From assembly GCF_000150275.1 (NCBI RefSeq), contig NW_002060943.1, positions 12,533,694 through 12,597,693 on the forward strand: 64,000 nt of DNA, in the 5' to 3' direction. The translations under genes and the position numbers were made by a program. This DNA comes from Trichoplax adhaerens (lineage: Eukaryota > Animalia > Placozoa). Below the pieces are notes generated by a model. The model saw only the letters and a list, made by a program, of their open reading frames with translations, ran no database searches and was not told the origin of the DNA. Position 1 is the first letter of the stretch, and each line of letters begins with the position of its first letter. Shown piece after piece: positions 2,705 through 29,980 of this stretch.

Positions 2705-5578
2705 ATGCGCGCAAGCGATCATGGTAAATATAAGGAACCTTGGTCATTCCCTTGATATCACTTCACATTCGTAACCTTTGCTCCACTAATAAAATTTTAT
2801 TTTTCTATCTGTTGTATATCATATTTGAATGATATTTGGATAGGTACTGGTATCCAAAGCAAAAATTACTTAAAAGCGTATAATAGAGCAATAAAGCAAG
2901 GAAAGCGTCGCAATAATTTGATTCGTGCTATGTTTGTTGGGCCTCGTAATGTCGGTAAATCATCGATTATGAGAGTTTTCACTCAGCAAAGGCTAACCGG
3001 TCATGACTCACCGACACAAGTTGCTGAATGGTCGGAAAGAATGATCAAAATCAATGCTTATGACGTTTATGATGGGAAATTTTGTGCTATGAGTGAAATA
3101 TTAGAAAAAATGTAATCGCGTCTATAGAAGAATCGCCTCAAGTTACCAAAGAACTTGATGACAATCCAAACTTCAAGAAGCAGATTATCGAAACACCCAT
3201 ATTAAGTAAAGAGAATGCACAAGCTGCAACAGACGAATCATCATTAAATAACGTATGCCTCGTCTCTTCTGATACAACCCAAAGCGACAATCTAATAGTA
3301 TCGATCTCATCTCAAGTTACTAAGATTTCGCTAGAGAGTGAATTTAATTCGAGCACAATGCAAAACGACCTTCAAGACTATTTTGTATCCATTACGAAAG
3401 ACAACAAAGATGCAAAAGAGGATAGAAAATATGCTAAAATATGGGATTTCGGTGGCCACTCTGTCTATCACGTTACCCATCGGCCGTTTATATCCGCTAA
3501 TAATATTTATATTCTTGTCTTTAACATTACCCAAAATATTAATGGCAAAGTAAAAACAAGAGATGATTTACTACTTAATATCACCTATTTACAAGCCATG
3601 CAAGAATGGCTTACGTCGATTATAAGCGGCCATAGGGATCAAAGTGATATTAGCATCAATGTTGACAGTGTACCTGTGAAATATCATTGCCTATTGTTAT
3701 TCTTGTGGCTTCTCATGGCGATAGTCTTGATGGCAAAGAAGATAGAAATAGTCGATTTAAACAATTTGAGCAAGATTTAATTTCTTATATGCCAACTTAT
3801 TAGCGTAATATCTACTCTTCAGGTATTATTTTTAATTGTAAACCTGAAGATAATAACTTAGCTACGCTATCTCAACGTCGAGAATGTTGTCATCGTTTAC
3901 ATCTCATTATTAAAGAATTTGTTCTATCCTTATCATTTATTCGTAATCCAATTCCTATCAGGTGGTATATTATGGCTACAATACTCAATACATCTTTTCA
4001 CAGATATGAAAATCAAGAGTCATCATCCGTAATTAATCAAATTAGAGCAGCTCGTGTTCGTGATATTATGACTATGCAAGATGTAACATTATTAGCTCAA
4101 GATTATAGGTTGTATGAAAGTGAAGAGGAGCTAAAAGCGATGCTAATGTATTTACACGACTTAGGAGAGATTATATTTTATCAGAAAGCGGGCGATAACG
4201 GAATTATTATAACTAATGTCGATCGGTTATTAGATATATTTCGCGCGATCATTCAGTTAGATGAATGTTTAAGCGGAAGTTTAGAATTAAAATCTGAATA
4301 CAAGAAAGCGAGCCAAACCGGAAGACTATCAAGGGTGTACATCGAATATTCTCTTAAAAAATTTAAGTTAGATGAAAATAGCAAGAATTGTATATTAAAT
4401 TTGATGGAAACATATGATATTATTTGTTCGATTAGAAATGATAATATCGAAAATAGAGAAGATAGTCAATACTTTGTTCCATATTTACTTCGTCCCGATG
4501 TGAAACCTTTTGATTTAAGCAGATTTCATAAGTCGGATTGGCTATATATCGGCTACTCGTACAAAGAAGTTCCTCATATTCCAGATGGAATTTATTATTG
4601 TTTACTGTCATCGTGCTTAAGAGAATGGAATAATACAAAGGTAGAAATATGTTATCAATGCGCTAAATTTTATCTGAAAGAAGATCACTACTACCTTATC
4701 GTTAAAAAAGAGCAATCGTACATAGGCTTACGATATTGTTATCAAAAAATGGCCGACGCTAAAACTGACCGAATGTTTAAGAGCAAAATCAGAGACTGTA
4801 TACGCGAAAAGCGTCCTCACGATATTGTACTGAAGAAATTGTCGTCTATAGTTGCTGAAAGGATGCCCAAGTTTTACAATGCGACATGTTATTTTCACGT
4901 CCAATGTCCAGAATGTCATAAATTAACTAAAATAACGAGTAAATGTAGTCTAGAAGGTAATAAGATGACTGAATGTGAATATTGTAATGAATTCTTTTCA
5001 AGTCAATCTGCAAAGGATTGGAAAATTGATGAGGAGGAGCCAGAAATATGTAAGTTATACCTGAAATTTGATTTGCTAGTATAATTCTAATTGGATCTTA
5101 ACTAGAATAGCGATCGTTATACAATGCACAGTACAATATATTAGTATCTTTTATCAAAGTAGTATCGATGCCGAGATATAGTACATGATTATTTTACAAA
5201 TTATTAATGCAGAAGTATCAATTTTCAAGTAGTTCAATTTTATATCACTAATTAATTACATCTATTTTCAAATTAGCCGTTTCGAAAGAAGTAGATCCTA
5301 AAGAAGTAGATATCAGGCACTATTTTTCTTGTATTGCAAATTTAATCGAAACGGACTGGAAAAAGTTAGCAGCTGTATTAGATCCGAAAATTAGTACTAA
5401 AGTTATCCAAGAACAAAATCGAAACGATGTATTTGGCCAAGCGATAGAACTACTAAATAAATGGTACAATAAATATCCACATGTTGGTATTCGTCGTCTA
5501 GAAGTCGCCTTGAGACGCATAGGAAGAAGCGATATTGTTACTCGTATTAATCAAATTAATCAAGAATTAAATATATAA
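2705..5578 (+). pseudogene. Roco-family protein (Roc GTPase-COR-CxxC/CxxC-Death domain), disrupted
   Basis: P-loop GPRNVGKSS, G3 KIWDFGG, G4-like IVILVASHGD (shifted frame ~3685-3725), COR motifs IPIRW, LMYLHDLGEIIFY and YFVPYLL, then CPECH..CEYCN. Donor at 5050; death-domain exon 5277-5578 (IETDWKKLAAVLDPKI..LLNKW..LEVALRRIGRSDIV). Lesions: frameshifts at ~3105-3110 and ~3684, in-frame TAG 3801-3803. Putative first mini-exon 2705-2723 splices to 2844. Confidence 0.88.
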
Positions 5579-5920
5579 ATATAAATTTTGTAATAATTTT
5601 ACCATTATTTGCTTCTAAAACGAGCTAAATAGTGAAAAATGCATAAAAATTAACTAGGATTATCAGAGCTGTTCTCGTTATAATTCAACTTACGTAAAAG
5701 AAATTGCTAGCAGCTTTTACTCATTGGTAGCTATTATATCGCCTAACTAATTTACACTGAAATTTGGAATACTTATTGTTCAAGATTTGATAGTAACTAT
5801 TTTTATACTCGTCTGTTGTGAAATAATCACTTTCATATTAGCAGATTTTGTTGTGTGTGTAGAAGTATTGATCAATTGATAAAAAAAATTATACTAGTTA
5901 ATTTTGTAACTGGAAATAAA

Positions 5921-7902: not shown

Positions 7903-8261
7903 TTAAGCGCGTGTACTCGGTCGGTTGCGAGCTATACAATATAATCCGACTACGAATATAGCGAGAACAATAATTGAAGATAGACGATTGATACGTAGAA
8001 TGGGCTCTGCCTTTGGTATGTTTTTGGTGCCCACAATATCTTTTCTAGAAATTTCCAGCAAAGCTTTATCTAGCTTATCAGTTGTCGCATTTGTAGAATT
8101 TTTCTGACGCCATGTATTAAGAAATTTCAATGCCCGATTGAAATCATTATTTTCCTCTTCTTTGATTGCATTAACCGGAATTTCTGGGTCGAGTACTCTC
8201 GCTAATCTTGTCCAATCTGCTCCGATCTTGCTCGCAATATGACGAATGTAATTGTTTAGGC
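7903..8261 (-). CDS. Terminal exon: death domain plus C-terminal transmembrane anchor (3' end of ZU5-UPA-DD-DD-TM gene)
   Basis: AG acceptor at 8262-8263. Translation LNNYIRHIASKIGADWTRLARVLDPEI..ALKFLNTWRQK..LDKALLEISRKDIV, then LSSIIVLAIFVVGLYCIA and basic tail RNRPSTRA*. Confidence 0.85.
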
Positions 8262-10597: not shown

Positions 10598-10868
10598 CAT
10601 CTTCTTTTACAGCATTGGCTTTCCTTTTTAAATTTTTATATGTAGAAACAACTTTTAAAGAGTGCTTCAACTAATGCTTTCTTTGTGTAACTCCGACCTT
10701 TTCTACGCTTATAATTACTCAACATTTGCGCACATTGATCGTCAACTGATCCAATTTTTTCAGCTATAATTTTATCGATGTCGCCTTCATCAATTCCAAA
10801 TTCTCTTGCCAAAGTTTTCCACTTCGTTCCAATATCTTTTACGATTTTGCCGTTATACTTCTTGGCTG
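10598..10868 (-). CDS. Death-domain exon of the ZU5-DD gene (one-base frameshift near 3' end)
   Basis: AG/GT-bounded 271-bp exon: IVKDIGTKWKTLAREFGIDEGDIDKI..DQCAQMLSNY..LVEALFK. An extra base in the run at 10653-10656 gives TAA at 10636-10638. Confidence 0.82.
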
Positions 10869-11153
10869 CTACAATAATTTTATTTTATTTGCAAAAATAG
10901 GATCAGCGGCTACTTACGGTACATCATATTAAACAGTATAATAGAAAATCGAATGTAGCAAGAATGAACGATTCTCTCTATACTAAATATATTCCTCTTT
11001 CTAAGTTGAAATTGTTGAAAGCGCTTGCTATACAAACCAATTAAATGACTCTATCTTACAAATCAGGTAAGTCGCTACTATTACAGTATGCGATAGATTT
11101 TACTGTATTATCACTTAAAATAGTAAAAGAATGTTAGCCACAGTACAACTTAC

Positions 11154-12087: not shown

Positions 12088-15000
12088 GAACTCTTTTGGC
12101 TTAAATGATTCTAATATAGTGTGATTTACATAACTCATTGTTGTTGTACTAACTGCAAGATATTCTCTTTAAAATGCAGAGTGTGAGAACCTATTGAAAA
12201 ACATACTTTAATTCAAAGAAGATTGTTGCAAAACACATTTTACTGAACAGAATTTGGCTTTTTACGCTTTGGTAGTACTTGTAACGATCAAAATTCAAAC
12301 GATTGCAGACGGTCATATTTAAAAATAAATAAATCATTTGCAGAAAATTATAAAATAGCGATAGCAAAATAAGACTACTGAAAAACGGATGATTGTAAAG
12401 AAATATTTCAGTTTACTCTGCAAGATTGCAGCAAATCTCGTATTGCAAAGTACGGTTCTGCACTGTAGGTGAAAATGACGAAATTTTTAAATGTGCGGAA
12501 TGTTGTTACACAAGTTTGTCAATTTACAATTATCTAAGTTTTAAAAATATCGACATATGTTTACAATGACTGACAGAGTATGTACAGTTGAAGGGGATAA
12601 TGGCCAATAAAAGTACTTACTTATGCACGTTATACTGTGTTGCGCCTTAAAGTGTGTACATTTCGAAAAGATTCTAGTTACTATATCGTAAGTTAGAGAA
12701 GTAGTCTTGCTTACTAAAGGTAAACTTGACTTGCTGTAAGTCACATAATACTAAATAATGATATCTTGCTATCTAAACTTTATTAAAAAAACTACTGACT
12801 AAGTCATTAGCTAATTGATTCATCAGTGTTGGTAAATGATGCAATTAACTAGAGAAAAGATGGTACTCTTTTCAACTTATTGAATAAGCTATTTAGTATA
12901 CAGTTAGATCCAAGCTTGCATCATTGTAGCTTACTGAAAATATACTGTTACTAGTTTTGGATTAAAATTATGCATTATGTATAGGCGATGAAGTGATTTT
13001 ATAAACGCTTTCTTGAAAAGCCGGTAGTAAAGATAAATGAGATGTGACGATCAATTTAGCATATGTATACTGTGTAGTGCCAGGCTTATTAGCCCTACAC
13101 AAAACTACTGCATTTTAGCTGAAATCACTGCAATGTGATAATCCTTTGCGATTTTTCGTTCTATCAGTAAAAAATCTTCGTTAGCGATCAGTTTGGGTAA
13201 TTTTGATAAGGTTCAGCAGTAAATAGTTCTTGTCGATTCTACTGCCTAGATGCAATCTCGTTTCTACTGCAATAAAGTTACTAACTTCATTAAACCCTAT
13301 ATGATATTAATTTGTAATAGCCTCACTGTGTGATAAAGCGTCTAACTTTAAGCAAAGACTTCCGTATCTTGAGAATAAATTACATCTTCCACCAAGGACC
13401 AGATTAGCTACGACTAACTTAACTTCGAAGACGAAATCTCCTGCTTATATGTACATTTAGTTGCAAAGTATCATCAGGATACAGAATTCAACATCTATCT
13501 TAGTTAGCCTAGGATTCGTTACTTGTGTATGTTAAGGTGTTACAAAGCATAGAAAATCAAAGCACAAATTACGCTATTGATAATAATGGCACAATTTACC
13601 ATATCTGTAGGACAATGCTTAATATTTTTGCATCGTTATTATTTGATCCAAAATCTATTTAATGTCTTTCATAATTCAAAGTAAAGAGAATAATTTCCAT
13701 AAAATTTAAAAATAATTTCTAAATAAAAGCTGTATATATAATATTTCTTCTGCAGGAATTTAAGTAATAATAATATTTCTTCTATCGTAAAGAATACCTT
13801 TGCTGGCTTGTCTCATATACTGGCACTGTAAGTTCAATAATGATACAACTACTTATTTGCATTTTAATTAAACGTAAATTAATAGCAACTGTTCATTACT
13901 TTTATTAGTTATCTTAAACAACCTATCAAAACTAAAGTATCTAGAAATGGAAACATTTACTGAAATGAATTCGCTTGTTGGCTTGTAAGGCATACAAATT
14001 TCTCTTTGCTACTCGATAAATATAATATCATAGCCATAATTCCAATTGAATTTTATTCACAATTTGATAATTCACCTATAGACCTTCACCTACTGTACAT
14101 CTTGAGCATTTGAGTTGCTATAAATTCATCCAAAGCTAGCCTTGCAAGGAGAAATATACCAAACCAATGCTTTTAGTTTACGGATATTTGAGGAAACTAC
14201 TAATCCTTCTAATTGCAATTTTATAGCGACTTTTTACACTTATTTGTTTCTACATTAACTAAAATTTGACTGGAAGACGTATTACAAATTGACGAACTCT
14301 TGTACTCCTTCGTAGTAGCCTAAAGTAGTGATATCCCTACTTTACCTATAAGTTGAAGTCGCGAAATTTAAGCTCAGTTACATAATTAAAGTTGAAATAT
14401 TTAAATGTAAAAGTTTAATAATGAATTCATGATAGCTGCATTACAGTGTCTTGTTTATAGAATCATTTCTGCAATAGAATTCTTTACAATCTAGCTACTA
14501 AGTTAAGCAACTACATTATGGAGATGGGAATAGGAATTTTTGTCTATGTTAGAATAATTTGATTAAGCTTAACCTTATTTAGTCAATTTCTAGTATTAAT
14601 ACATAGTATCATGTTTTATTACTACACCGACTATTGTAAGATAGCAATACTAAAATTGATGTTTATATGAAGAAGCTGAGAACAATCTTTTGATAGTTTG
14701 AATAACTGTGATTGAATTGATTTATGAGAGATTGTTGATTAATTTGAGAATGTTCTGTGTGTCGGTGATACCATTTGACTACCTTGTAATAGTCATTGGA
14801 CATCTTTACTGATAAAGACTACTGTCTTCATCAGCTACCTAAATTACTATGTAATCCACTAGAAGGTTTTGATGCTAGTAATGCAACTACTTAGCTAGAC
14901 TACGAAGCGTCAAGTTCTATCTGATATTTGGTTTAGGAATATACCAAGTAGATCGTAAATTGTGTTGCTGTTAATAGCTGATACGCTGAATTTACAGTAA

Positions 15001-15605
15001 CATTACTAGACCGTAAAGGCAATTTCTGTAACAAATCTACAATTAGAATTACAAGCGTAAGGCCTTATTGTAATGAAATGAAAAGTGTAGAGATCAAGCT
15101 ACAAAACTTTAACAAAATTTGATTCTACCTTCGTTGCACTCCGGTCGACTTAACGCTAATACTTTGACACCAAATAAAATTTGGGGAAATAACCGAACAA
15201 CAATATATTTCAAAGCAAAAATGGAGAGAAGTATAAACCGAACAACCTTACAAATACTTAGCTTTAAGTATTATTAAAATAAATGACAGACTTAAAAACT
15301 GTCAACGACCAAACATCCTTTCAAAAAGAAGAACGTTTTAACTTACGACAATTCGACCCCGAAGGCCTTTTAAATTAAACACGTTCTTCAAATAAAATCT
15401 TCTTCTACTCTCCCTCTAAATTTTCTAATTGCACTATCATTTATAGGCTTCGTAGAGCCGCCTGAGGTATTTAAAACTAAACATTTGCTAACCAATCGCT
15501 CTTAAGATCCGTTTTAGAAAACTACTTTGCACCATTTAAGAAAACAAAAATCATTNNNNNNNNNNNNNNNNNNNNNNNNNNNNNNNNNNNNNNNNNNNNN
15601 NNNNN

Positions 15606-15921
15606 TTTTCATCTTTCACAGTAGTATACCCTATTAGTATCTTTGCGGAGATATAGATGCTGATAATCGTCGCTAAAAAACTGATTTGGGTTATAACGCA
15701 AAGTTTAATATAAAATCAGAGTCTTGTCGTGTTACGCTTGAGATACGCTATCGTATCTACAGTAAATTAAAAATAGTCCATGAAAATTCATTTATCACAA
15801 ATTGTGTAAATAATGAGAAGAAAATCTTGATAAACACTTTCTGTTTATAGCATAAAAGCTTACCATCTTCTTTTACAGCATTGGCTTTCCTTTTTAAATT
15901 TTTACATGTAGAAACAACTTT
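15606..15921. repeat. Partial duplicate of 10339-10655 (intron plus 3' part of DD exon), next to an N gap
   Basis: Direct alignment by eye with only a handful of substitutions; similarity ends abruptly inside the DD exon. Confidence 0.9.
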
Positions 15922-16595: not shown

Positions 16596-19500
16596 ATCTT
16601 TGCAATATTGTGGCCTCAATGCTTCCTTTGTAAATCAACTGATCCATTATTTGCCAGGCATATATGATTTGTGAGTGAAAAGAAAATAATAACGAATTTT
16701 TGCCAATAAGAGTTTGTAGAAACGCTAATTTTATGATATAGAACAATAATGAAGTAAACATTTAGAGTTATTTGAAGCACTCGTGTCAGTTACTGCATTA
16801 GAATTAGTAGACAATGTCAATGTAGAAATTAAATTGGTGATGAGTATTCTTATATTAAAGTTACTTTATTACAGCTTACTTGCAATAAAACACTAATCCG
16901 ACAAGTCTAGATTAAGCAAATTCTGGCATTGTAGATTTATTTTTCAGCATACTAATGAAAACTACAACAGGTGTAGATTACAACTACTTTATCACTAATG
17001 TTAGTCTTGTCATTCAAGACCAGTTAAACAACAAACAATTTTACTATCATATATTAGAACAGTATCGAGAACAGAGAACCAAATATCAACTACTAAACTT
17101 ATGCTGTAATTTATATGCGGACTTTATAAACTCCCACTTAGCCAGCGACAGTGCACACGAAATCATAAATAATACAAAATTAGATTAATGTAATTTAGCA
17201 TCCCTACTGACTATACCGTAGCAGATAGCATAAATTACTTTTATGTATATCAAAACTTATGATTAACCAACTAATTATCCGTAGCTCAGTACTTTACGAT
17301 AGGAAAGTATACAGTAAGCATAAGATAAGTATGCATTACCAGATATTGTCTGCATAGTTGCAAGAGTTGCAAGATGAACAGCAGCTTTAGTAAATAAAAC
17401 TACAATAAATTATAGCATTGATTACGGCGTTAGAGTACCTGACTCTGTAACATACCTTTCCTAGTTTTAACTTACATTTTCTAGCTTACAACAACATAAA
17501 TACATGAAACTGGTTTTTGAGAAGTAAATCGTCTTTTTCAGATCACTTGATGGTAATAACTTAATTGGTCTTAGAAAAGACTTTGTTGAAAAATTGTACT
17601 GTTTAGATGACGTGTACGTACGAGTATAAGTTTTATTTTAAGAAACAGATCAAAAGATTGTTATTTTCTAAAGTCGGAAATAATTAACGAATGTATGATC
17701 TTATCAATTAAGTTTTTCCATACTTTGGTAATCATTAATTAGGACATTAGGTTACACTCGCCTTTCTAGTAATGATATTTTTGAAATTTTATCAAAAAAG
17801 TCTGAATATACAAAGCTGTAAGTTGTTGTCGATATTTTCATATAACTTGGTAAAACATATCGTAGAATATCTTCTTTAAAGATTTGATACTACTCGTATT
17901 CTCTTAGCGCATAGAAGGGGCTATGAGAGCTATATGGAACTATAGCTAGTTTACAGTCGATATTATTACTACGAGTAGACATATGAAATGTTTGATATAT
18001 AATTATAATTTGAAAATTTTGAGTTTATTTGACGTTTTACAGTAAACTACATTATCCCATAGACATAAGTTACTCTTAGATACAATTTTTATAAATAGAT
18101 AACTACTCTTAATTTAATAGCGGAATTAATGCCTGCTTTTGTATCATCGTTTTAGCGAACTACATGGTCTTCAACTGCGTTCGTTCCCTCCAAAATCGCT
18201 ACCTTACATACTGTTACAGTGTTATATACTGTATTACAGTAGAAATATCTATATTAGGATAATTCTATTAGACTATCCTTATTTAGTTAACTTCTAATTT
18301 GGATATACTGTGTTTTAATATAGCACTGACTTTTTATGACAGTGACACTTATACACATACTGAAATTAATAGTTATAATAGGGAATGCAAATCATCTGCT
18401 TACAGTTCCAATCATTGTGATTGTAATTTACTTATGGTAGACTGTAAATTATCATGGAAATGTTCCGTGATAGGACATATCGTAATCTGACTATTCTGTA
18501 TTAGTCATTACATGTCTATGTTCGTAAATACTGTTGTCTGCATTAAGGGAGCAGTAGCTAAAATTAATATCTAATTCAGTAAATGATTCTAATGTTAATT
18601 GTATTAACTATGACTCATGAACTATTGAGGAGTAGTATATCAATGCAATATATCGTGAAATAATGAGAATTTCTCCAACTTAGCGTTTAACGTAAAATAC
18701 GAGGCGTTTAAGTCTTTGTGTAGTCTGCTAGTAGAGCAAAAGTGTTTGTGATAGTGCAGATATCGTTCCTTGATACGTGGTTCAAGAAATTGACTTATTG
18801 ATCGTATATTGCGTTATCTTGTTGCAAAGCTGTTTTGTGACACATACGCTCCGTAATAACTCTGTATGTGTACTTAAATTAGTGCATAATCTCCGTTCAC
18901 TACAATTTATGGTAGACGTCGAAAGTCTAACGCGACGGGAATAGTCAATTTTAGAAGTTTCATGAAACATAATTTTATCTGCCAGGATTGTAAGGAAATA
19001 ATTTCTTCCTAATCAATTATTAGGAGTTTAAAAGACAATCTCATCCAGTCTCTGGATGAAAGATTTATCAAGCTTCTAAATCTGGTATCGCATCTGTATG
19101 TTACTACTGTTTTTACATTATTAAATTACCGTCATCCATTCACTAAGACAGGCAGTGCATGCTAAAATTTAATAAATTACATTTAAACTGTACTAGCCCG
19201 CTCATCTAATATTCTGTTATTATAAGTTCAATTTTTAAAATAGCCTTACAGACATTTAAATTTTACTTTTTATCTTAAATTTACAATAAATGTCTTGTAG
19301 GTTTACATGTCATTAATATATACTAGTAAGTTATTAAATCATTTAATAGCGGTACATGTTTCAAAAATTTGATAAATTTCAAATAGCATCGATTCTATCT
19401 AACATAGTAGTGTTGTAACCTTGTTTAGGTTACATTCTTCTACTTAATATTGTATATTAATGGCATCCCACAGCATTTTTGAGTACTATAAATTAGAAAG

Positions 19501-20180
19501 GTATCGACTACATGTGATGTCGAATCAAGCACTACAAATGTAAAGCGTAAAAATTATAGTTCATGAAAACGAGTACAGTGTATAGAGTACAAATTCTAGG
19601 TGAATAAATCTACTGTTAACGGTATTAAGAACATATACAGAATGACATAAAGTACAGTAGAGTTCTGCAAAATTCCAAACTTCTTACTCCTACTTAAATT
19701 TGTAATCTTTAATCAATACTCTATATTGCTATTTTGCAGTATTATGGACTTAAGCTTTCGTGTTACTGTACGTAAGTCTAGTCTACCTTTAGCCCGTTGG
19801 GGCATACTTGGCTGTTGTAGCCTTAGTATTCGTACAGATTCAAAGACCCAGGTTTCCTTGTCGTGGGCTGACCACGACATAACTTAAATCACAAATTACC
19901 CAATGAATAAATATTGATGAAAGTTGAAAACTTTGAAACTTCATAAATGGATACTAATGAGAAATTTGGATGGTATATTATAACTTCGTAGTATTCGACT
20001 CCCATAACCTCTAAATTTAATAAGTTTGACACAATTTATAAGATTTATGGTCTTTTACATTTTTGCCCATGGAGCTTGAAATTCTTTATCATGAATTTTA
20101 CGCATATTAGAATTGGATAAGAATTCAGCCAAATAGCAATGAGATTAAATTATCGTAATTTAGTATCTCGAAACAGGTGC
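16596..20180 (+). pseudogene. Decayed LRR-receptor (LGR/TLR-ectodomain-like) exons
   Basis: Phase-2 LRR exons bounded by AG/GT: 16596-16670 SLQYCGLNASFVNQLIHYLPGIYDL, 17542-17613 SLDGNNLIGLRKDFVEKLYCLDDV, 19024-19095 SLKDNLIQSLDERFIKLLNLVSHL. LRRNT-like CDCNLLMVDC at ~18415; stop-riddled FAHGA*NSLS*ILRILELDKN at ~20060-20125. Confidence 0.6.
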
Positions 20181-21701
20181 AGACTTTTTGGTAACAGATT
20201 ATTTAATATACAATGCCTAGTTATCTTAAAAACATGAATTTAACTTTTGAGAGTAAAGTCTGCTTTAGATTTAAATGCAATCCTTTATGTAATAAACTAC
20301 TTAATATATTCAATTCTTTAAGTTAATCAGTTGTAACTATGTATCTGGATATTAAACGCCTGGGTTAAGAAATTATAATTAATAGACACTTCTATTAAGC
20401 TATCATAAATCAACGTAATACCAAGTTGTACCTATAATTCTAAGGTTGTAACTGCAAGCTAATGTCAAAATAGTTCAGATTGTGTACACTTTGAGTGCTG
20501 CATGTTATGATATCATTCTTATACCTTCTATTTTGAATTCTTTTTATATTCATATCAAAAAATAAAATTGTTATGTTTTTGGTAATTTTATTGACTGTAT
20601 ATTGAAAGCATATTAAACCTTTAAATCGTTGCTTATGGTGATTATATTACACACGCTGCTTGCTTTAACAACTTTTCCCCCAATTTTTGTACTGCAATAA
20701 CTGAATTTTTTTCAAGTAACTGACAAAATGTAGNNNNNNNNNNNNNNNNNNNNNNNNNNNNNNNNNNNNNNNNNNNNNNNNNNNNNNNNNNNNNNNNNNN
20801 NNNNNNNNNNNNNNNNNNNNNNNNNNNNNNNNNNNNNNNNNNNNNNNNNNNNNNNNNNNNNNNNNNNNNNNNNNNNNNNNNNNNNNNNNNNNNNNNNNNN
20901 NNNNNNNNNNNNNNNNNNNNNNNNNNNNNNNNNNNNNNNNNNNNNNNNNNNNNNNNNNNNNNNNNNNNNNNNNNNNNNNNNNNNNNNNNNNNNNNNNNNN
21001 NNNNNNNNNNNNNNNNNNNNNNNNNNNNNNNNNNNNNNNNNNNNNNNNNNNNNNNNNNNNNNNNNNNNNNNNNNNNNNNNNNNNNNNNNNNNNNNNNNNN
21101 NNNNNNNNNNNNNNNNNNNNNNNNNNNNNNNNNNNNNNNNNNNNNNNNNNNNNNNNNNNNNNNNNNNNNNNNNNNNNNNNNNNNNNNNNNNNNNNNNNNN
21201 NNNNNNNNNNNNNNNNNNNNNNNNNNNNNNNNNNNNNNNNNNNNNNNNNNNNNNNNNNNNNNNNNNNNNNNNNNNNNNNNNNNNNNNNNNNNNNNNNNNN
21301 NNNNNNNNNNNNNNNNNNNNNNNNNNNNNNNNNNNNNNNNNNNNNNNNNNNNNNNNNNNNNNNNNNNNNNNNNNNNNNNNNNNNNNNNNNNNNNNNNNNN
21401 NNNNNNNNNNNNNNNNNNNNNNNNNNNNNNNNNNNNNNNNNNNNNNNNNNNNNNNNNNNNNNNNNNNNNNNNNNNNNNNNNNNNNNNNNNNNNNNNNNNN
21501 NNNNNNNNNNNNNNNNNNNNNNNNNNNNNNNNNNNNNNNNNNNNNNNNNNNNNNNNNNNNNNNNNNNNNNNNNAAAATCGTTCAGATTGATTATAATTTT
21601 AGTTTCGCAAAGTATTAAAACAGTTTCTATTTACTGTTTCATTTGTAAAAAGTTATATAGAAACATTCTGCAACGTAATTTCTTCATTGATATTAGTATA
21701 C

Positions 21702-22661
21702 CTTCATTAAGGTTAAAGATTTTAGCGTTTGATCATTTTGATTACTACGAGGCTTGATAGTAATTCTAGCTGCACTAGTTAAAGGATCGTTTGGATTTAA
21801 AACTTTACAGTCGTAATCAAGATGATAGCAGACCCTTTCATTCCAATTCACGGTAAGCGTTCGAATCATCAATTCTTTATCCTCACACAGAAGGCGCCCA
21901 TTCTTGAATTCGATTTTATAGGAGCCATTTTCTAATATAACATCTTCTAATCCACAAGGCGAAAGGGCAATTCGCCGGTAGGGCTCAGGAATATTTTGCA
22001 TTATGTTATCGTCATCTACATTTTTACTCAATATTACAATCTTCAGATGAGTGGTTTTTAAATAGGAATCAATCGGCGATAAGTAAGCCACAGCTTTGAT
22101 TTCCTGCTGATATGAGGGAAATATATGCTTGAATAAAACTGATACTGCTGATTTAATATAGATTAAATAATCCGAAAAATGTTGAATAGGGACATTAATA
22201 CAATATGTATTCTCAATTTCTTGTATAGATATGGATTGGTAATCTAATTTCTGAATGTTCCAAACTTTATCTTCTTGACTTCGATGGCCTAATTTTAAAG
22301 GTAGGTCTTTAATGTTATCCACTTTGAAATACTGACACAATTCGCTAGCGGAAGGAATTGGTAACCGTAACATTACTTCAAATGATTCTTGGTAGCCAAA
22401 ATGGTATCCATCGGGCTCTAGTCGAATAATGGGTGATAAATAAATTAGATGTTCACCATCATCGACGGGTAGGCCAAAAATGTACGGGGCATCCGTGTAG
22501 AAGGTTGTTAATGTTATGGATAAATTATCCTTTAAAGCCTTTTTAGGAACGAATAGACGTAGCTGAGGTATTTCTGGTAAGGTTATGGTATGATTATCAG
22601 ATATTGTACAAAGTTCAGTTATTTGAGGATAGCCATTTAATGCTATAAAATAGGTTGACAT
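21702..22661 (-). CDS. ZU5-UPA exon (PIDD/UNC5CL-like, HFS motif), copy A
   Basis: ZU5 motifs LRLFVPKKAL, LSPIIRLEPDGYHF, VMLRLPIP, W..., VPIQHFSDYLI, followed by a ~150-aa UPA-like region. Donor AAG|GTATAC at 21701. The true exon start is upstream of the ORF Met and uncertain; small acidic upstream exons lie at ~22864-22932, ~23487-23576 and ~23661-23705. Confidence 0.8.
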
Positions 22662-24524
22662 TGTGTTAGAGAATATGCAAGGAAAAATGCTGCAAGTATG
22701 AATACGTTTCCATCTGCAGTATTTTGCGATGATATTACCAGTAAAGATTATTCCGCTTACAATCTATCACATTATAATCTCAATAATTGTAAATCTTATA
22801 CAATATTTCTATGATATCTTGATCCTAGAATGATAATTGTCAAAGTTATACTAATGATTTTACCCGGTATAAATCCTGGAAATATATTTAAGTGACTTTC
22901 GTTCTGGTAGTCAATATCAGTTATAGCATTTTCTAGAAAAATAACAATATTTATTAATGAATTTTAAGCTAAATCGAATTTTATTTAGTATTTATTAACT
23001 CTTCAATATTCCTATCTCAACTTTACAGTATGCTACCGCTTAATATAGTAGAGTTAAATGTCAAGGATTATGTTTAGTAGATGATTATTCATCAAACGTC
23101 TTACAACTTAACTGAAGAAAACTAAAATAAGCATTTATTTCTCTAAGTAATCTAGCTATCCCGATATTATAGTCAGCTCAAATTTATGGATTTGGCTTAA
23201 AACAGACTTTGAAGTAGCTATACATGTATCTTATTGCTGTATAATAATAGTAGAATTCTAATAATTCTATTCTATGCAAATATTTGCAAGCAGACATGAT
23301 TGTCCTATGTGGAACGCAGCGGCGGTGAAATTAAAATATTTCTTGTTATACAGGAGTTCTTTTACTTTGTGTGTACATTATTGTCAAGAATAGAATCCTT
23401 ATCGTAATTTTTAATCTTTTCAGAAAGAAAAGCATGACAAAAACAATAATGTGCATTGCATTGGAAACAGTTTACTAGAAACCAACCTGGAAGTTCTTTC
23501 GCAGCTTTTTCATTTTCAGCTTCTGCCCTTACGTGGCCAGCAATAGTATTACTGCTCTGTTCGCTACGTTCTATATCTACCAATGCAAGGTTACATCAAT
23601 TCTTCAATGTGAATTTATTTCCTATTTATTACAATGCTGTTATTCTTTATTCCTTTTACCTTCAACATCGCTTTGTATCAACTGTTGCTCTTCAGATATG
23701 TTACCTAGAAATTAAGTATGTGCAAGAACATTTACCATCATATTCAAACAAAACAAAAGGAAGATCCTGCGTGTACGTAGGATTTCAATCATATCATGCT
23801 ACTTTAAAAAATTTACAGTGGCACTACATTAACGTCAGGCAGATTACATAGAAGTATTCTTTACACGCTACCCGTAACTTATGTCAATTTTGTGCAACAT
23901 TCTTAACTAAAACGAAACGTTTATTCTATTTTTGATAATTTTTGATAATTTTGATAAGGTTCAGCAGTAAATAGTTNNNNNNNNNNNNNNNNNNNNNNNN
24001 NNNNNNNNNNNNNNNNNNNNNNNNNNCGTAAACGTTAAAAGTATGTACTCTTTTGGCTTGAATGATTCTAATATAGTGCGATTTACTTAACTCAATGTTT
24101 CTGTACTAACTGCAAGCTATTCTCTTTAAAAATACAGAGTGTGAGAACTTATTGAAAAATATACTTTAATTCAAAGAAGACTGTTACAAAACACATTTTA
24201 CTGAGCAGAATTTGGCATTTTACGCTTTGGTAGTACTTGTAACGATCAAAATTCAAGTGATTGCAGAAGGTCATGTTTAAAAATAAACAAATCATTTGCA
24301 GAAAATTGTAAAATAGCGATAGCAAGATAAGACAACTGAAAACGGATGATTATAAAGGAATATTTTAGTTTAGAGAATAATCGTTATTTGTTCAAAAATG
24401 ACATAAAATGTAGCTGTGTTCTGTAAAACGAAATTAATAATCTTTTAAAATTGAAAAGATACCGGTATTTGTTTGACTAGCATCAATATTCTCAAGCGTT
24501 AATCATATATTATCCATTTCTTAC

Positions 24525-25659
24525 TTGTAAGCTTGGAATTCGTGTCCATACCATCAGCTAAAGATGGCTAGAAAATCGTTCAGATTGATTATAATTTTAG
24601 TTTCGCAAAGTATTAAAACAATTTCTATTTACTGTTTCATTTGTAAAAAGTTATATAGAAACATTCTGCAACGTAATTTCTTCATTGATATTAGTATACC
24701 TTCATTAAGGTTAAAGATTTTAGCGTTTGATCATTTTGATTACTACGAGGCTTGATAGTAATTCTAGCTGCACTAGTTAAAGGATCGTTTGGATTTAAAA
24801 CTTTACAGTCGTAATCAAGATGATAGCAGACCCTTTCATTCCAATTCACGGTAAGCGTTCGAATCATCAATTCTTTATCCTCACACAGAAGGCGCCCATT
24901 CTTGAATTCGATTTTATAGGAGCCATTTTCTAATATAACATCTTCTAATCCACAAGGCGAAAGGGCAATTCGCCGGTAGGGCTCAGGAATATTTTGCATT
25001 ATGTTATCGTCATCTACATTTTTACTCAATATTACAATCTTCAGATGAGTGGTTTTTAAATAGGAATCAATCGGCGATAAGTAAGCCACAGCTTTGATTT
25101 CCTGCTGATATGAGGGAAATATATGCTTGAATAAAACTGATACTGCTGATTTAATATAGATTAAATAATCCGAAAAATGTTGAATAGGGACATTAATACA
25201 ATATGTATTCTCAATTTCTTGTATAGATATGGATTGGTAATCTAATTTCTGAATGTTCCAAACTTTATCTTCTTGACTTCGATGGCCTAATTTTAAAGGT
25301 AGGTCTTTAATGTTATCCACTTTGAAATACTGACACAATTCGCTAGCGGAAGGAATTGGTAACCGTAACATTACTTCAAATGATTCTTGGTAGCCAAAAT
25401 GGTATCCATCGGGCTCTAGTCGAATAATGGGTGATAAATAAATTAGATGTTCACCATCATCGACGGGTAGGCCAAAAATGTACGGGGCATCCGTGTAGAA
25501 GGTTGTTAATGTTATGGATAAATTATCCTTTAAAGCCTTTTTAGGAACGAATAGACGTAGCTGAGGTATTTCTGGTAAGGTTATGGTATGATTATCAGAT
25601 ATTGTACAAAGTTCAGTTATTTGAGGATAGCCATTTAATGCTATAAAATAGGTTGACAT
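24525..25659 (-). CDS. ZU5-UPA exon copy B (24700-25659) plus next small exon (24525-24567)
   Basis: Protein identical to copy A. The 43-bp exon PSLADGMDTNSKLT (phase 0 to 1) is phase-compatible with the 11154-11270 exon. Confidence 0.8.
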
Positions 25660-26208
25660 TGTGTTAGAGAATATGCAAGGAAAAATGCTGCAAGTATGAA
25701 TACGTTTCCATCTGCAGTATTTTGCGATGATATTACCAGTAAAGATTATTCCGCTTACAATCTATCACATTATAATCTCAATAATTGTAAATCTTATACA
25801 ATATTTCTATGATATCTTGATCCTAGAATGATAATTGTCAAAGTTATACTAATGATTTTACCCGGTATAAATCCTGGAAATATATTTAAGTGACTTTCGT
25901 TCTGGTAGTCAATATCAGTTATAGCATTTTCTAGAAAAATAACAATATTTATTAATGAATTTTAAGCTAAATCGAATTTTATTTAGTATTTATTAACTCT
26001 TCAATATTCCTATCTCAACTTTACAGTATGCTACCGCTTAATATAGTAGAGTTAAATGTCAAGGATTATGTTTAGTAGATGATTATTCATCAAACGTCTT
26101 ACAACTTAACTGAAGAAAACTAAAATAAGCATTTATTTCTCTAAGTAATCTAGCTATCCCGATATTATAGTCAGCTCAAATTTATGGATTTGGCTTAAAA
26201 CAGACTTT
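24572..26208. repeat. Near-identical duplicate of 21574-23210 (offset 2998 bp)
   Basis: Only one substitution noticed over ~1.64 kb; the copies diverge sharply after AACAGACTTT. Confidence 0.95.
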
Positions 26209-27724
26209 CTAGCTCCTCTTGCTCTTCTTGCTTCTCATGCTCCTCTTGTTTCTCCTCTTGCTTTTCTTGCTTCTCTTGTTCCTCTTGTTTCTCTTTGAGT
26301 GATTTCTCATTCGTAGAAATAGCTTCTTCACGCTTACCTTCAGCTTGATAGACATTTCTTAGATTGTTATATGACTTTGCGACATCTGGATGGTTGTGAC
26401 CCAAAACTGATTCTTGAATGTTATAGGATTGCTCGTACATAGAAATAGCTTCTTTATGCTTGCCTTGATCATTATAGACATTTGCAATGTTGTTATATGT
26501 ATCAGCAGTACTTGGATGATTGTTGCCAAGTTGCGTCAGTTTAATGTTGAGTGACTTGTTATACATTGATAGAGCGTCATCATACTTGCCTTGACGATGA
26601 TAGACACTTGCAATGTTGTTATATGTTGTAGCAATACTTGGATGATTGTCGCCAAGTTGTGTCAGATTAATGTTGAGTGACTTGTTATACATTGATAGAG
26701 CGTCATCATACTTGCATTGATGACAATAGACAATTGCAATGTTGTTATATATATCAGCAATACTTGAATGATTGTCGCCAAGTTGTGTTAGATTAATCTT
26801 GAGTGACTTGTTATACATTGATAGAGCGTCATCATACTTGCCTTGATTATCATAGACAATTGCAATGTTGTTATATGTATTAGCAATACTTGGATGATTG
26901 TCGCCAAGTTGTGTCAGTTTAATCTTGAGTGACTTGTTATACATTGATAGAGCGTCATCATACTTGCCTTGATCTTTATAGACACTTGCAATGTTGTTAT
27001 ATGTTGTAGCAATACTTGGATGATTGTCGCCAAGTTGTGTCAGATTAATCTTGAGTGACTTGTTATACATTGATAGAGCGTCATCATACTTGCCTTGACG
27101 ATTATAGACATTTGCAGTGTTGTTATACGTTGTAGCAATACTTGGATGATTGTCGCCAAGTTGTGTCAGTTTAATCTTGAGTGACTTGTTATACATTGAT
27201 AGAGCGTCATCATACTTGCCTTGATCATCATAGACTTGTCCAATGCTGTCATATAATACAGCAATACTTGGATCGTTATTTTCAAGAATTTTCAGTTTAA
27301 TCCTTAATGATTTATTGTATTCCTTTAAAGCCTCGTCATGCTTGCCTTGATTCTGGTAGACCAAGCCAATGTTATGATAGGACTTACTGACATCAAGATG
27401 TTCACTCCCTAACGATTTTAATTTTATTTGAAGTGATTTGTTGTAATCACTCAAAGCACCCATAAAATCACTTTGAAGTCGTTTACAGTCGCCCTGGATA
27501 TCGAAACAAGAAGAAATCTTGACCTCTTCTAGTTTCTTAGCTAACTTTTCTGCTTTTTCACTGTATTCATTGGCTTCTATCAATTGATATTTTTGCAGGT
27601 AAGATTGAGCCATAGCGAGATAAATAGAATATTCAAGTTGACGACGACTATCACTACTCTCCGCTATCGATTTGATTTGAGTTACAGCTTTTTGAAAATA
27701 AAATAATGCAATTGCCTTCGCCAT
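26195..27724 (-). CDS. Intronless TPR protein (42-aa KLC/NPHP3-type repeats) with acidic E/Q/K tail
   Basis: About nine repeats of LGDNHPSIAxTYNNIAxVYxxQGKYDDALSMYNKSLKIxL; near-identical 126-bp DNA units. Probable original start at 27797 is out of frame. Confidence 0.9.
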   Translation of the reverse strand: MAKAIALFYFQKAVTQIKSIAESSDSRRQLEYSIYLAMAQSYLQKYQLIEANEYSEKAEKLAKKLEEVKISSCFDIQGDCKRLQSDFMGALSDYNKSLQIKLKSLGSEHLDVSKSYHNIGLVYQNQGKHDEALKEYNKSLRIKLKILENNDPSIAVLYDSIGQVYDDQGKYDDALSMYNKSLKIKLTQLGDNHPSIATTYNNTANVYNRQGKYDDALSMYNKSLKINLTQLGDNHPSIATTYNNIASVYKDQGKYDDALSMYNKSLKIKLTQLGDNHPSIANTYNNIAIVYDNQGKYDDALSMYNKSLKINLTQLGDNHSSIADIYNNIAIVYCHQCKYDDALSMYNKSLNINLTQLGDNHPSIATTYNNIASVYHRQGKYDDALSMYNKSLNIKLTQLGNNHPSTADTYNNIANVYNDQGKHKEAISMYEQSYNIQESVLGHNHPDVAKSYNNLRNVYQAEGKREEAISTNEKSLKEKQEEQEKQEKQEEKQEEHEKQEEQEELESLF

Positions 27725-29980
27725 GATATTTCACGCCCTTTTTGCGTATAGATTCAATCTCGTCAAATATCGTAGAATTGCTAGTCTGATTGGCCATATT
27801 TTACTTTTCAACAACAATCAAAATATACAATTTGAGAAAAATAGTCACAATTTGTCTACTCGATAGGGTTAACAATTTTGATCGCTGTACAAATGAGTGA
27901 TAAAATACGTAAAGAGCACACTATCATGGATGCTCGATGCTTTCAAATCAAGATCAGCATTACAAAGTCTATTTCAGTTAGGAACATGCTCTAATTAGCC
28001 AAATCGGATACGCCTTTATTTGTTCGCGGTTTTCAATCATTCATCCATTATTCTCTTACAATTCATCAGGATGATGGAGAAGAAATAAATTAAAGTGGGC
28101 AGGCATTCTTGTCGATACTTCTTTCTATCCGTTTTTCTAATATATCAATCATCCAAGTCAATCATTATTATAATAATAATTAAAAAACGCATCATTAGCA
28201 CAACACTAGCATCAAAATGAGTCAAATGTTGAGGCTACATGTAAAATAAGTTAAAGATTAGCATAAACATGAATAAAATAGGAACATGATAATAGCTTCT
28301 ACGCATACCAATAACGATTGAATTAATAAACTTGCTTAATACAATTTACTGCAGTTGTAAATTGATGTAGAGCTTTATACTCAAGTGGCGTGGATTACTT
28401 GTAGCTTTCCGCTATTTACCATTGCTGCCTTATACAGTACTAATCGAGACTATTTCATGACTTATTTTTCACGTCAGACAGTTGATTTAGTCGATTATGC
28501 TCATGCTTTGACATTTCTCAGCAGTCAATAAATGTAGTATCATAAAATAAACTGATATGATTATTTTCTACATTACTTCACGATCTAAAAATCCAATTCT
28601 ATTAAGTTCATACTCAAACTCAAGATATTAATTAATGCTAATTACTATATTCATCATAAAGCAGTATACTATAGCTACAGGTTGCACCTTTGACGATACA
28701 GTGTCCATCTTATTTGTCAATATTGTGGAGTAGTATACAATTCGCATTTACTTCGTTAACATTGATTGGATAATAATTTTGCATCATCAAATTGATTGAT
28801 TGATGAAAACAAAATCAATTGATGACTAATTAAACTAAGGCTAATGTATAAATCACCTGCATAGCGCATGACACTTATGGTACTTACACGAGGATAAACT
28901 AGCATTCTATTAAATGTATAAATTTTATGTAAGATATTAAGATAGACTATTTTATTGCAGGTTTAGTTTTAATCTCATATAATGCCATGCATATAAGAGG
29001 TGATCTGTATTATTTCAATTTACGATGTAAGTGACTCGCACTCAATTCACCATACAAAATCTAAATAGCACAAATCATACAAGTTAAAGCCGTAGTGTAG
29101 ATTCACCATTTCATTTAAAATCTGCAGACTTTCAATCCTATATTCAAATATCATAGTTATCACACTGATGTCGAAAACATCAGTAACTGAAATTAAATAT
29201 GTACAGTATAATGAACACGATGCGATTAAATGTATCATTAAACGAGTATATATTCAGTGACCGACTCGCTAGCTTGATTAATTAATAATATTCAAGTAGC
29301 ACCCAATTAAAATATCTTTTGTATGGTAATCTACTACTGTAACTGTAAGCTAAATTAATAATATTCATGACTAGAAAGTACAATTGAAATTTTGCAAATG
29401 AGAACTGCAATCGTAGATTATAGGCTATAGGAAAAGGGTAATGAAGAAATACTGCGCGTTATGTAATATTAATGGTGTGGTTTTGCAATATAATTGTTTG
29501 TATTTTAATTTGCGTATTTTCATTAAGCAATAGCAATTAGCAGTAAGCAATAAGAACATATTCATTGAAACTAATGACAAATAGCGACGAGTATTCAGTG
29601 TCGATATATTTTAACATTAATCTACTATATCGCACATTGCCTACCACCGACTTCTTTCACTATACACGCTTAAAGAAATACTCACATAAAGCTAACACCA
29701 ATTGCATAGCTACTAGTGTCTGCATATGGAAACTTATTTTCCATAATCGTATGGAAAGGGCAGAATTGAATTATCAAGATATATGCATATGCTATGCATA
29801 TATAGCATGCATATAGTATATTGCGTGAATATAGCATGAGCCCAATGACTTTACTCCGATTAGGATTTATCTTTGCTATTAACTCATAATATATACTGAG
29901 CATCGAGCGAGTATATTGTCAACATCAAACTGGAACTTAATTAGTTTAAGTAAATATTCATATATATAGTTCAAGTTTAC

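What the first reader, a model, noticed from the sequence alone, without database searches (positions are those of the whole stretch)
2705..27797. Candidate placozoan death-fold signalling locus: Roco-DD + PIDD-like ZU5-UPA-DD-DD-TM + hypervariable TPR sensor
Seen: three signalling-type genes lie together. The Roco and ZU5 genes are tail-to-tail. Their terminal death domains are unusually alike (DWKKLAAVLDPKI vs DWTRLARVLDPEI, with DP-x-I where many DDs have G-L/F-S), and both sit on phase-1 terminal exons. Known: death domains assemble homotypically; PIDD uses ZU5/UPA/DD with HFS autoproteolysis; Roc-COR is a dimerising GTPase switch; fungal NLRs use homogenised TPR arrays as variable sensors. 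Inference: the locus encodes a modular non-NLR innate immunity or cell-death system (TPR sensor, GTPase switch, membrane-anchored DD platform) evolving by exon shuffling and birth-and-death. The copies here are partly disabled, so function must be tested on intact alleles or paralogues.
Basis: partly seen in the sequence, partly recalled or inferred. Interest (0 to 1): 0.9.

Follow-up and report, generated by a model that had tools for sequence, protein, structure and literature searches.

The report
Decayed placozoan death-domain receptor gene cluster
This stretch of the Trichoplax adhaerens genome holds worn and partly mis-assembled copies of two large placozoan receptor-like gene families, TPR-Roc-COR-Death (already published) and a barely described TPR-ZU5-UPA(-Death) family that resembles PIDD and the NLRP1 FIIND module, and it is not a tidy three-gene signalling system.

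Summary

The gene models and the key inference do not hold.
- **Roco gene:** it lacks its TPR exon and carries two 1-bp frameshifts and a stop codon, so it is probably a pseudogene.
- **ZU5-UPA exon:** it is not next to the DD-DD-TM exons. It lies at least 13 kb and two to three gaps away, directly downstream of the TPR ORF.
- **Second ZU5-UPA copy:** read depth and the single differing base point to an assembly or allelic artefact.
- **The two "unusually alike" DDs:** they are 40% identical and are not sisters. DWxxLAxxLDPxI marks a subfamily of about 50 DD exons. These follow Roc-COR, ZU5-UPA or TPR exons across the genome, always at phase-1 junctions.

Paralogous loci show each architecture as exons in one orientation, read as one gene: TPR→Roc-COR→DD and TPR→ZU5-UPA→DD. 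The Roco family is published, and this scan had already found it on other DNA of this genome. I found no paper on the ZU5-UPA family (at least 27 exons, missed by Pfam). Modular exon shuffling is supported. Immune function and DD pairing are not shown.

The parts
2843..5050 (+). Roc-COR body of a TPR-Roc-COR-DD family gene, here probably a pseudogene. Homology to the C1333 paralogue starts at 2721, and there is no TPR exon upstream. It carries 1-bp deletions at about 3104 and 3683 and an AAG>TAG stop at 3801-3803. It ends at a phase-1 GTAAGT donor at 5050.
   Evidence: Pfam Roc and COR-A. tblastn of the Trichoplax sp. H2 orthologue P0001 (96% identical) needs three frames. DNA alignment to C1333 gives the indels and the stop. 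Donor phase.
5277..5575 (+). Terminal Death-domain exon of the Roco copy, with a phase-1 acceptor and the motif DWKKLAAVLDPKI.
   Evidence: Pfam Death E 8e-10. A 91% identical copy lies at C1404:966044. dN/dS is about 1 against that copy. Phase.
7906..8261 (-). Orphan terminal Death-domain exon (DWTRLARVLDPEI) with a C-terminal hydrophobic tail at 7930-7983. No upstream exons were identified.
   Evidence: Pfam Death E 8e-10. Copies at C1198 (98%) and C1333 (92%). The tail is found only in this lineage. dN/dS is about 1. Phase-1 acceptor.
10652..10869 (-). Orphan Death-domain exon of a second type (GIDEGDIDKII). In paralogues this type follows Roc-COR or precedes ZU5-UPA. Here its 3' end is cut by a 41-nt deletion at about 10652-10655.
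   Evidence: Pfam Death E 1.5e-11. Paralogue maps. It forms a separate clade in the tree.
12090..12415 (+). Low-copy element (16 copies) that accompanies this second DD type. In C1404 it lies between the COR exon and the DD exon. A second copy at 24047-24372 abuts gap 3.
13541..20729 (.). Non-coding segmental duplicate of C1414:12735483-12748188 (91-98% identical). It is interrupted by dispersed repeats at 15069-15555 and 18212-18842 and by gap 1 (15556-15605).
   Evidence: No domain hits.
21574..23210 (-). Second copy of the ZU5-UPA block, starting right after gap 2. It is probably an assembly or allelic duplicate, not a real tandem copy.
   Evidence: 99.94% identity to 24572-26208. Read depth of the block equals single-copy depth. 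The only differing base (24621 A against 21623 G) reads G in all runs.
24700..25641 (-). ZU5-UPA exon: an intact ORF with the HFS triad at 25171-25179, at the ZU5/UPA boundary.
   Evidence: AlphaFold2 pLDDT 92.5. Foldseek hits ankyrin-B ZU5-ZU5-UPA-DD (2e-11), UNC5b and the NLRP1 and CARD8 FIIND. Profile against PDB hits ankyrin-2 at 8e-15. HFS is kept in 18 of 30 relatives. Only 1 difference in about 900 nt in a DNA run of a second organism label.
25860..25931 (-). Small linker exon (..NIFPGFIP) with an AG acceptor and a phase-1 GT donor. It is conserved in paralogues (HLFPGMNP).
26198..27797 (-). TPR ORF. Six homogenised 42-aa units lie inside 26459-27373. An 8-nt indel at 27706-27709 separates Met27797 from the TPR frame in this assembly. 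The ORF ends in a stop at 26195-26197, and the only nearby GT (phase 1) is three codons earlier.
   Evidence: Pfam TPR_12 E 1.6e-130. Repeats. The 8-nt insertion is present in runs X2, X10 and X19, and RNA-library contigs cover 26169-28004 only. Frames.

Best explanation
The interval is a decaying, partly mis-assembled piece of a lineage-specific expansion of modular death-fold receptor genes in Trichoplax adhaerens. It is not a three-gene system.

**What the interval contains**
1. A 5'-truncated, frameshifted copy of the published TPR-Roc-COR-DD family.
2. Two orphan DD exons. One is of the type that normally follows Roc-COR, and one has a hydrophobic tail.
3. A TPR ORF that is intact in other individuals and present in an RNA library, followed by a linker exon and an intact, conserved ZU5-UPA exon with an HFS motif.

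Item 3 most likely belongs to a TPR-ZU5-UPA(-DD) gene. That is a PIDD-like or FIIND-like protein with TPRs in place of LRRs. Its DD exon, if it has one, would lie in or beyond gap 3.

**How members of these families would work (inferred from the named families, not shown here)**
- The variable TPR array binds a ligand or holds the protein inactive.
- Roc-COR acts as a nucleotide-dependent dimerising switch.
- Alternatively, ZU5-UPA cuts itself at HF|S and frees a UPA-DD fragment.
- The shared C-terminal DD subfamily then assembles with DD adaptors.

**Shown here:** the domains, the exon phases, the lesions, the recurrent order of the modules in one orientation, and module exchange. **Inferred:** that TPR and ZU5-UPA here form one transcript (about 45%), autoprocessing, DD assembly, and an immune or cell-death role.
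For: - **Organism:** the genome is T. adhaerens. TRIADDRAFT_52770 lies on the 13,260,704-bp contig that holds the window.
- **Roco lesions:**
- **Family sizes:** at least 110 Death exons, at least 49 COR-A matches and 27 ZU5-UPA matches.
- **Locus maps:** TPR→Roc-COR→DD in L010, L012, L015, L028 and L009. DD→Roc-COR→DD in L019 and L023. TPR→ZU5-UPA→DD in L006 and L007.
- **Trichoplax sp. H2 gene models:** P0017 and P0026 join TPR to ZU5-UPA.
- **ZU5-UPA relatives and fold:** distant relatives are LRR-ZU5-Death proteins.
- **Splice structure:** the linker exon has a splice acceptor, so the ZU5-UPA exon is not a first exon.
- **DD motif and tree:**
- **Paralogous segment:** it has DD plus Roc-COR where the window has ZU5-UPA.
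- **Duplicate block:** depth and base evidence point to one real copy.
- **Literature:** at least 17 ROCO genes with CARD, death, TPR and LRR domains in T. adhaerens, naming TRIADDRAFT_62498 (PMC4104024).
Against: - The one clear RNA library (X19, another organism label) covers only the TPR ORF and gives zero depth on the linker and ZU5-UPA exons.
- The TPR ORF ends in a stop, and its only possible donor (GTCTGT) is weak.
- The longest DNA contigs in two runs match 25768-26208 and then continue unlike the window. The TPR/ZU5-UPA junction is therefore not confirmed.
- No DD exon was found downstream of the ZU5-UPA exon.
- The Roco lesions were not checked against reads and could in principle be assembly errors.
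- The dN/dS values rest on only 13-17 differences.
- Gene models P0017 and P0026 are predictions.
Confidence: 0.6

Rival explanations
1. The TPR ORF is a stand-alone single-exon gene. The ZU5-UPA exon belongs to a separate neighbouring gene (linker, ZU5-UPA, then a DD exon hidden in gap 3), or is a silent relic.
For: - RNA-library contigs cover 26169-28004 only.
- The TPR ORF has its own stop.
- Gene models treat ZU5-UPA-DD as separate genes: P0019 (Trichoplax sp. H2) and P0015 (T. adhaerens). P0015 has a non-TPR N-terminus.
- The junction at 26208 is not bridged by the main contigs.
Against: - The linker exon has an acceptor and no in-frame start.
- TPR→ZU5-UPA adjacency in one orientation recurs in at least 5 loci.
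- The Trichoplax sp. H2 model P0017 joins them.
- The ZU5-UPA exon is intact and nearly invariant in the DNA run of a second organism label.
Confidence: 0.3
2. Three separate genes (Roco-DD, ZU5-UPA-DD-DD-TM, TPR) act together, and the two look-alike terminal DDs pair with each other on a membrane platform.
For: - The domains exist.
- The terminal DD exons are tail-to-tail.
- All junctions are phase 1, so a DD to DD-TM splice would stay in frame.
- The element cut by gap 3 is, in paralogues and in read contigs, joined to the region upstream of the second-type DD exon.
Against: - The Roco copy is disabled.
- There is no ZU5-UPA within 13 kb of the DD exons.
- Paralogues order the modules DD→ZU5-UPA→DD, not ZU5-UPA→DD→DD.
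- The two DDs are 40% identical and are not sisters.
- TPR lies upstream in the same orientation in paralogues, not as a separate partner gene.
- dN/dS is about 1.
Confidence: 0.08

Closest known systems
ROCO proteins: DAPK1 (Roc-COR plus a C-terminal Death domain), and the T. adhaerens ROCO expansion described by Civiero et al. 2014 (PMC4104024)
   Same: Roc GTPase directly followed by COR and then a C-terminal Death domain. Paralogues carry N-terminal TPRs, as already reported for T. adhaerens. The paralogue TRIADDRAFT_62498 is named in that paper.
   Different: There is no kinase and there are no ankyrin repeats. This copy lacks its TPR exon and is broken by two frameshifts and a stop. I counted at least 49 COR-A matches, against the 17 genes reported.
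PIDD1 (LRR-ZU5-ZU5-UPA-DD) and the ZU5-UPA-DD supramodule of UNC5 and ankyrins
   Same: The ZU5-UPA fold. The HFS triad sits at the ZU5/UPA boundary. In paralogues a DD exon lies 0.3-1.5 kb downstream. The nearest non-placozoan sequence relatives are LRR-ZU5-Death proteins.
   Different: TPR repeats stand in place of LRRs. There is one ZU5 rather than two, as far as the 316-residue model shows. The family is too divergent for Pfam ZU5 (E 0.055). It is expanded to at least 27 exons, where a single gene is usual. No DD was found for the window copy.
FIIND of NLRP1 and CARD8 (autoprocessing ZU5-UPA ahead of a death-fold domain)
   Same: Structural match to rat NLRP1 (7crw) and to CARD8 (7jn7). 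The F|S site is in the same place. In paralogues a repeat-type sensor region lies upstream and a death-fold domain downstream.
   Different: The downstream domain is a DD, not a CARD. There is no NACHT. Cleavage is untested.
Fungal and brown-algal NLR-like receptors with homogenised, hypervariable TPR arrays
   Same: The 126-bp units are 85-91% identical, and amino-acid changes sit at a few positions (30, 37, 40, 41). dN/dS among units is 1.7. Close paralogues have ORFs of different length.
   Different: There is no NACHT or NB-ARC. The sample of six units is too small to demonstrate selection.

Membership tests
ROCO (Roc-COR GTPases) | Roc GTPase domain with a P-loop | tested here: met
   Pfam Roc E 1.4e-7, above the cut-off. 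GPRNVGKSS and WDFGG motifs are present.
ROCO (Roc-COR GTPases) | COR domain directly C-terminal of Roc | tested here: met
   Pfam COR-A E 1.8e-10 at 3804-5081.
ROCO (Roc-COR GTPases) | One continuous reading frame (a working gene) | tested here: not met
   Two 1-bp deletions and a TAG stop, relative to the Trichoplax sp. H2 orthologue and the C1333 paralogue. Not checked against reads.
Death domain (PF00531) | Profile match above the curated cut-off | tested here: met
   Three exons score 39.1, 39.1 and 44.7 bits against a 22.6-bit cut-off.
ZU5-UPA-DD supramodule (PIDD1, UNC5, ankyrin) | ZU5 plus UPA beta-sandwich pair | tested here: met
   AlphaFold2 pLDDT 92.5. Foldseek 4d8o 1.9e-11 and 3g5b 4.9e-8. 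Profile against ankyrin-2 7.8e-15. Pfam ZU5 alone is below its cut-off.
ZU5-UPA-DD supramodule (PIDD1, UNC5, ankyrin) | Death domain directly C-terminal of UPA | tested here: not met
   No DD lies between 21.6 and 24.7 kb, and the expected place is cut by gaps. The feature is met in at least 9 paralogous loci.
PIDD1 orthologue | N-terminal leucine-rich repeats | tested here: not met
   The upstream exon is TPR_12, not LRR.
PIDD1 / FIIND autoprocessing modules | H-F-S triad at the end of ZU5 | tested here: met
   HFSDY at residues 155-159 of the 316-residue module. The triad is kept in 18 of 30 aligned relatives.
PIDD1 / FIIND autoprocessing modules | Actual self-cleavage | not testable with these tools
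   Needs expression of the protein and an S-to-A control.
NLR / STAND receptors | NACHT or NB-ARC NTPase | tested here: not met
   No such Pfam hit in any ORF of the interval.
Hypervariable homogenised repeat sensors (fungal NLR type) | Highly similar tandem units with variation focused on a few positions and dN>dS | tested here: inconclusive
   dS 0.05 and dN/dS 1.7. Variation sits at positions 15, 17, 30, 37, 40 and 41. Only six units were available.
Tail-anchored membrane protein | A single hydrophobic segment within about 30 residues of the C-terminus | tested here: met
   LSSIIVLAIFVVGLYCIA, Kyte-Doolittle 2.64, 8 residues from the end. It is conserved in the C1198 and C1333 copies. Membrane insertion is untested and the upstream exons are unknown.

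The most novel reading that the evidence does not exclude
Placozoans have an NLR-analogous receptor superfamily. In it, a hypervariable TPR sensor is joined by phase-1 exon shuffling to either a Roc-COR GTPase switch or a self-cleaving ZU5-UPA (FIIND-like) module. Both end in one DD subfamily that feeds a common DD adaptor. A PIDD/NLRP1-type "cleave and release" sensor would then have been expanded into a multigene family in one of the simplest animals. Domain surveys have missed it because Pfam ZU5 does not detect it.
Probability: 0.25. Interest if true: 0.75.

Novelty: new variant of a known kind. Interest (0 to 1): 0.4.

Why it matters
The Roco half is known biology. The useful result is the ZU5-UPA half.

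T. adhaerens carries at least 27 exons of a divergent ZU5-UPA module. The module keeps the HFS self-cleavage motif. It is often preceded by TPR arrays and followed by a DD exon. About eleven of the exons are clustered in the last 0.7 Mb of the largest scaffold.

Pfam ZU5 finds only three ZU5 domains in this genome. I found no paper that describes the family. In the placozoan immunity survey PMC6321704, ZU5 occurs zero times.

If these proteins self-cleave and signal through their DDs, they would place PIDD- or FIIND-style sensing in a very early-branching animal lineage. They would also give a natural example of sensor and switch modules being swapped between paralogues.

The window itself is a poor place to study this, because its copies are broken or cut by gaps. 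The report also flags gene model TRIADDRAFT_52770 (a double ZU5-UPA) as a likely assembly artefact.

Tried and rejected
- **DD-DD complex prediction:** Roco-DD (5279-5575) with the DD of the DD-TM exon (7993-8259) gave no answer, score 0.00. This is evidence neither for nor against binding.
- **Survey of architectures carrying this DD type:** The search for homologous proteins with the DD region of P0019 returned only the query itself.
- **Search for a Trichoplax sp. H2 orthologue:** The search for homologous proteins with P0013 returned only two T. adhaerens models.
- **Contig look-ups:** The look-up of encoding contigs for P0021 and P0016 found nothing on record.
- **Source names:** The listing of cluster members gave no useful names for the close ZU5-UPA relatives.
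- **More genome sequence:** The DD tree and the neighbour maps therefore rest on 28 loci, not all of the roughly 110.
- **Hidden ZU5-UPA exons:** a profile search of every open frame of 18 aa or more in the window found none between 8.3 and 21.6 kb.
- **The 326-bp repeat at 12090 and 24047 as a transposon:** rejected. It has only 16 copies, and those whose surroundings I could check lie beside the second DD type.
- **Earlier notes near this place:** none.
- **Joined models:** Every exon was searched by reference on its own.


Full report
**Source.** The genome has 105.6 Mb in 1414 contigs, and the window is C1414:12533694-12597693. A protein encoded in the window, P0013, is TRIADDRAFT_52770 of Trichoplax adhaerens, on a 13,260,704-bp contig. 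That is the length of C1414.

**What is in the sequence.**
- On the + strand, Pfam finds Roc (2756-3112 and 3097-3777), COR-A (3804-5081) and Death (5252-5575).
- On the - strand, it finds Death at 7906-8292 and 10639-10884, and a strong TPR_12 array at 26198-27730.
- The quoted motifs are exact.
- The DD at 7906-8292 ends in LSSIIVLAIFVVGLYCIA-RNRPSTRA, a plausible tail anchor. Among the sampled DDs this tail is found only in this lineage.
- All three DD exons have phase-1 acceptors, and the COR exon has a phase-1 GTAAGT donor.

**The ZU5-UPA module.**
- A 356-codon open frame at 24694-25761 (-), 436 bp downstream of the TPR ORF, gets only a weak Pfam ZU5 hit (E 0.055).
- An AlphaFold2 model of its 316 core residues is confident (pLDDT 92.5).
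- The model matches ankyrin-B ZU5-ZU5-UPA-DD (4d8o, 1.9e-11), UNC5b (3g5b), and the FIIND of NLRP1 and CARD8.
- A profile of the family hits ankyrin-2 at 7.8e-15.
- HFSDY sits at the end of the first beta-sandwich, and H-F-S is kept in 18 of 30 relatives.
- A search of 1.8 billion representative proteins found 35 relatives. The eight close ones whose source I could see are T. adhaerens or Trichoplax sp. H2 models, or unnamed ENA/Logan contigs. The five distant ones I scanned are LRR-ZU5 proteins, two of them also with a Death domain, which is the PIDD architecture.

**Gaps and the duplicate.**
- 21574-23210 equals 24572-26208 at 99.94% identity and starts at the edge of gap 2.
- In three DNA-like runs the block has single-copy depth (X1: 114-160 against 157 in the flank).
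- The only differing base (24621 A against 21623 G) reads G in every run. I therefore take the second copy for an assembly or allelic artefact.
- TRIADDRAFT_52770, which strings both copies together across gap 3, is then an artefact too.
- The longest contigs match 25768-26208 and then run on unlike the window, so the junction to the TPR ORF is unconfirmed.
- Order across gap 1 is supported. 13541-15068 and 16328-18211 are colinear with C1414:12735483-12738890, and are interrupted here by two dispersed repeats.
- No open frame of mine crosses a gap.

**Gene models.**
- A profile search of every open frame of 18 aa or more finds no ZU5-UPA between 8.3 and 21.6 kb. That stretch is duplicated intergenic DNA plus repeats.
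- In paralogues the order is DD(second type)→ZU5-UPA→DD, not ZU5-UPA→DD→DD.
- The ZU5-UPA exon is preceded by a small conserved linker exon (25860-25931) that has an acceptor, so it is not a first exon.
- The TPR ORF lies upstream, and the only GT near its end is a phase-1 site three codons before the stop.
- Trichoplax sp. H2 gene models P0017 and P0026 join TPR to ZU5-UPA.
- Against one gene: the single clear RNA library (X19) covers 26169-28004 only.
- That library and two DNA runs carry 8 extra bases at 27706-27709. These bases put Met27797 in frame with the TPRs. In the window's version an ATG at 27724 still gives 509 codons.

**The Roco copy.**
- Against the Trichoplax sp. H2 orthologue P0001 (96% identical) it needs three frames.
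- DNA alignment with the C1333 paralogue shows 1-bp deletions at about 3104 and 3683 and an AAG>TAG change at 3801.
- Homology starts at 2721, so the TPR exon present in C1333 (TRIADDRAFT_62498) is missing.
- dN/dS of its DD exon against the C1404 copy is about 1, as it is for the DD-TM copies. These values rest on few differences.
- The second-type DD exon has lost 41 nt at its 3' end.

**The "alike" DDs.**
- The genome holds at least 110 Death exons.
- Each window DD finds 45-50 relatives. The two match each other at only 40-41% identity, behind about 25 closer hits.
- DWxxLAxxLDxxI occurs in about 27 of 36 sampled DDs, after COR, after ZU5-UPA or after TPR.
- In the tree, the Roco DD pairs with its C1404 copy inside an 18-member clade. 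The DD-TM lineage sits apart on a long branch.
- Near-identical DDs follow COR (L015) and ZU5-UPA (L006). This fits exon or segment shuffling.

**Family picture.**
- Maps of 28 loci show TPR→Roc-COR→DD, DD→Roc-COR→DD and TPR→ZU5-UPA→DD, always in one orientation.
- There are at least 49 COR-A matches, many inside open frames of 700-800 codons.
- There are 27 ZU5-UPA matches, about eleven of them at 12.55-13.25 Mb of C1414.
- The window's TPR ORF is 87% identical to one at C1414:12755819. Between that ORF and the duplicated intergenic segment, the paralogous region carries DD plus Roc-COR where the window carries ZU5-UPA.

**Known or new.**
- Civiero et al. 2014 reported at least 17 T. adhaerens ROCO genes with CARD, death, TPR and LRR domains (PMC4104024; also cited in PMC11378527).
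- Two earlier follow-ups of this scan described TPR-Roc-COR arrays with swapped Death and CARD tails elsewhere in this genome. The scan has therefore seen the Roco family before, on other DNA.
- I found no paper on a placozoan TPR-ZU5-UPA-DD family.

**Verdict.** It is right about modularity, phase-1 shuffling and decay. It is wrong about the gene models and about the special DD pair.

Exons were searched one by one by reference.

Noticed in passing
window 39067-40799: Tandem array of a 31-bp unit, about 55 copies, 75% matches.
   Followed up: no
window 44586-45734; 55071-55793; 36111-36775: Three further tandem arrays: 110-bp units (10.5 copies), 93-bp units (7.8 copies, 90% matches) and 115/231-bp units. 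None was characterised.
   Followed up: no
window 15069-15555 and 18212-18842: Two high-copy dispersed repeats, each with at least 35-40 copies at 96-98% identity (326 and 964 first-look candidates). Both are inserted into a duplicated intergenic segment, and the first abuts gap 1.
   Followed up: partly
window 13541-27730 vs G000:C1414:12735483-12757321: A large segmental duplication about 190 kb away on the same scaffold. The paralogous segment has a DD (12752270) and a Roc-COR ORF (12750013) where the window has ZU5-UPA. This looks like a natural module replacement, but it was seen only through coordinates because no more sequence could be fetched.
   Followed up: partly
window 21696-25659 (TRIADDRAFT_52770): The public 718-aa gene model with two ZU5-UPA modules strings together the duplicated block across gap 3. 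It is probably an artefact.
   Followed up: yes
window 62325-63911 (-); 41588-41843 (-): A second TPR_12 exon of 529 codons with no recognised partner module. Two short degenerate Death-domain fragments also lie outside the finding.
   Followed up: no
window 46426-47367 (+), 57059-58588 (-), 32371-32757 (-): Ordinary genes lie next to the cluster: a PP2C phosphatase, a carboxylesterase and a JAMP-like membrane protein.
   Followed up: no
G000:C1368:19801, C1360:12115, C1339:3104, C1414:13247651: Open frames of 5795, 8698, 7814 and 3440 codons contain DD, TPR or ZU5-UPA matches. They may be giant single-exon members of these families.
   Followed up: no
L029 12160-15749 (Trichoplax sp. H2, NOWV01000087.1): Next to the TPR-ZU5-UPA gene lies a second gene that carries both a Death domain and a ZU5-UPA module. 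The two kinds are therefore clustered in Trichoplax sp. H2 as well.
   Followed up: partly
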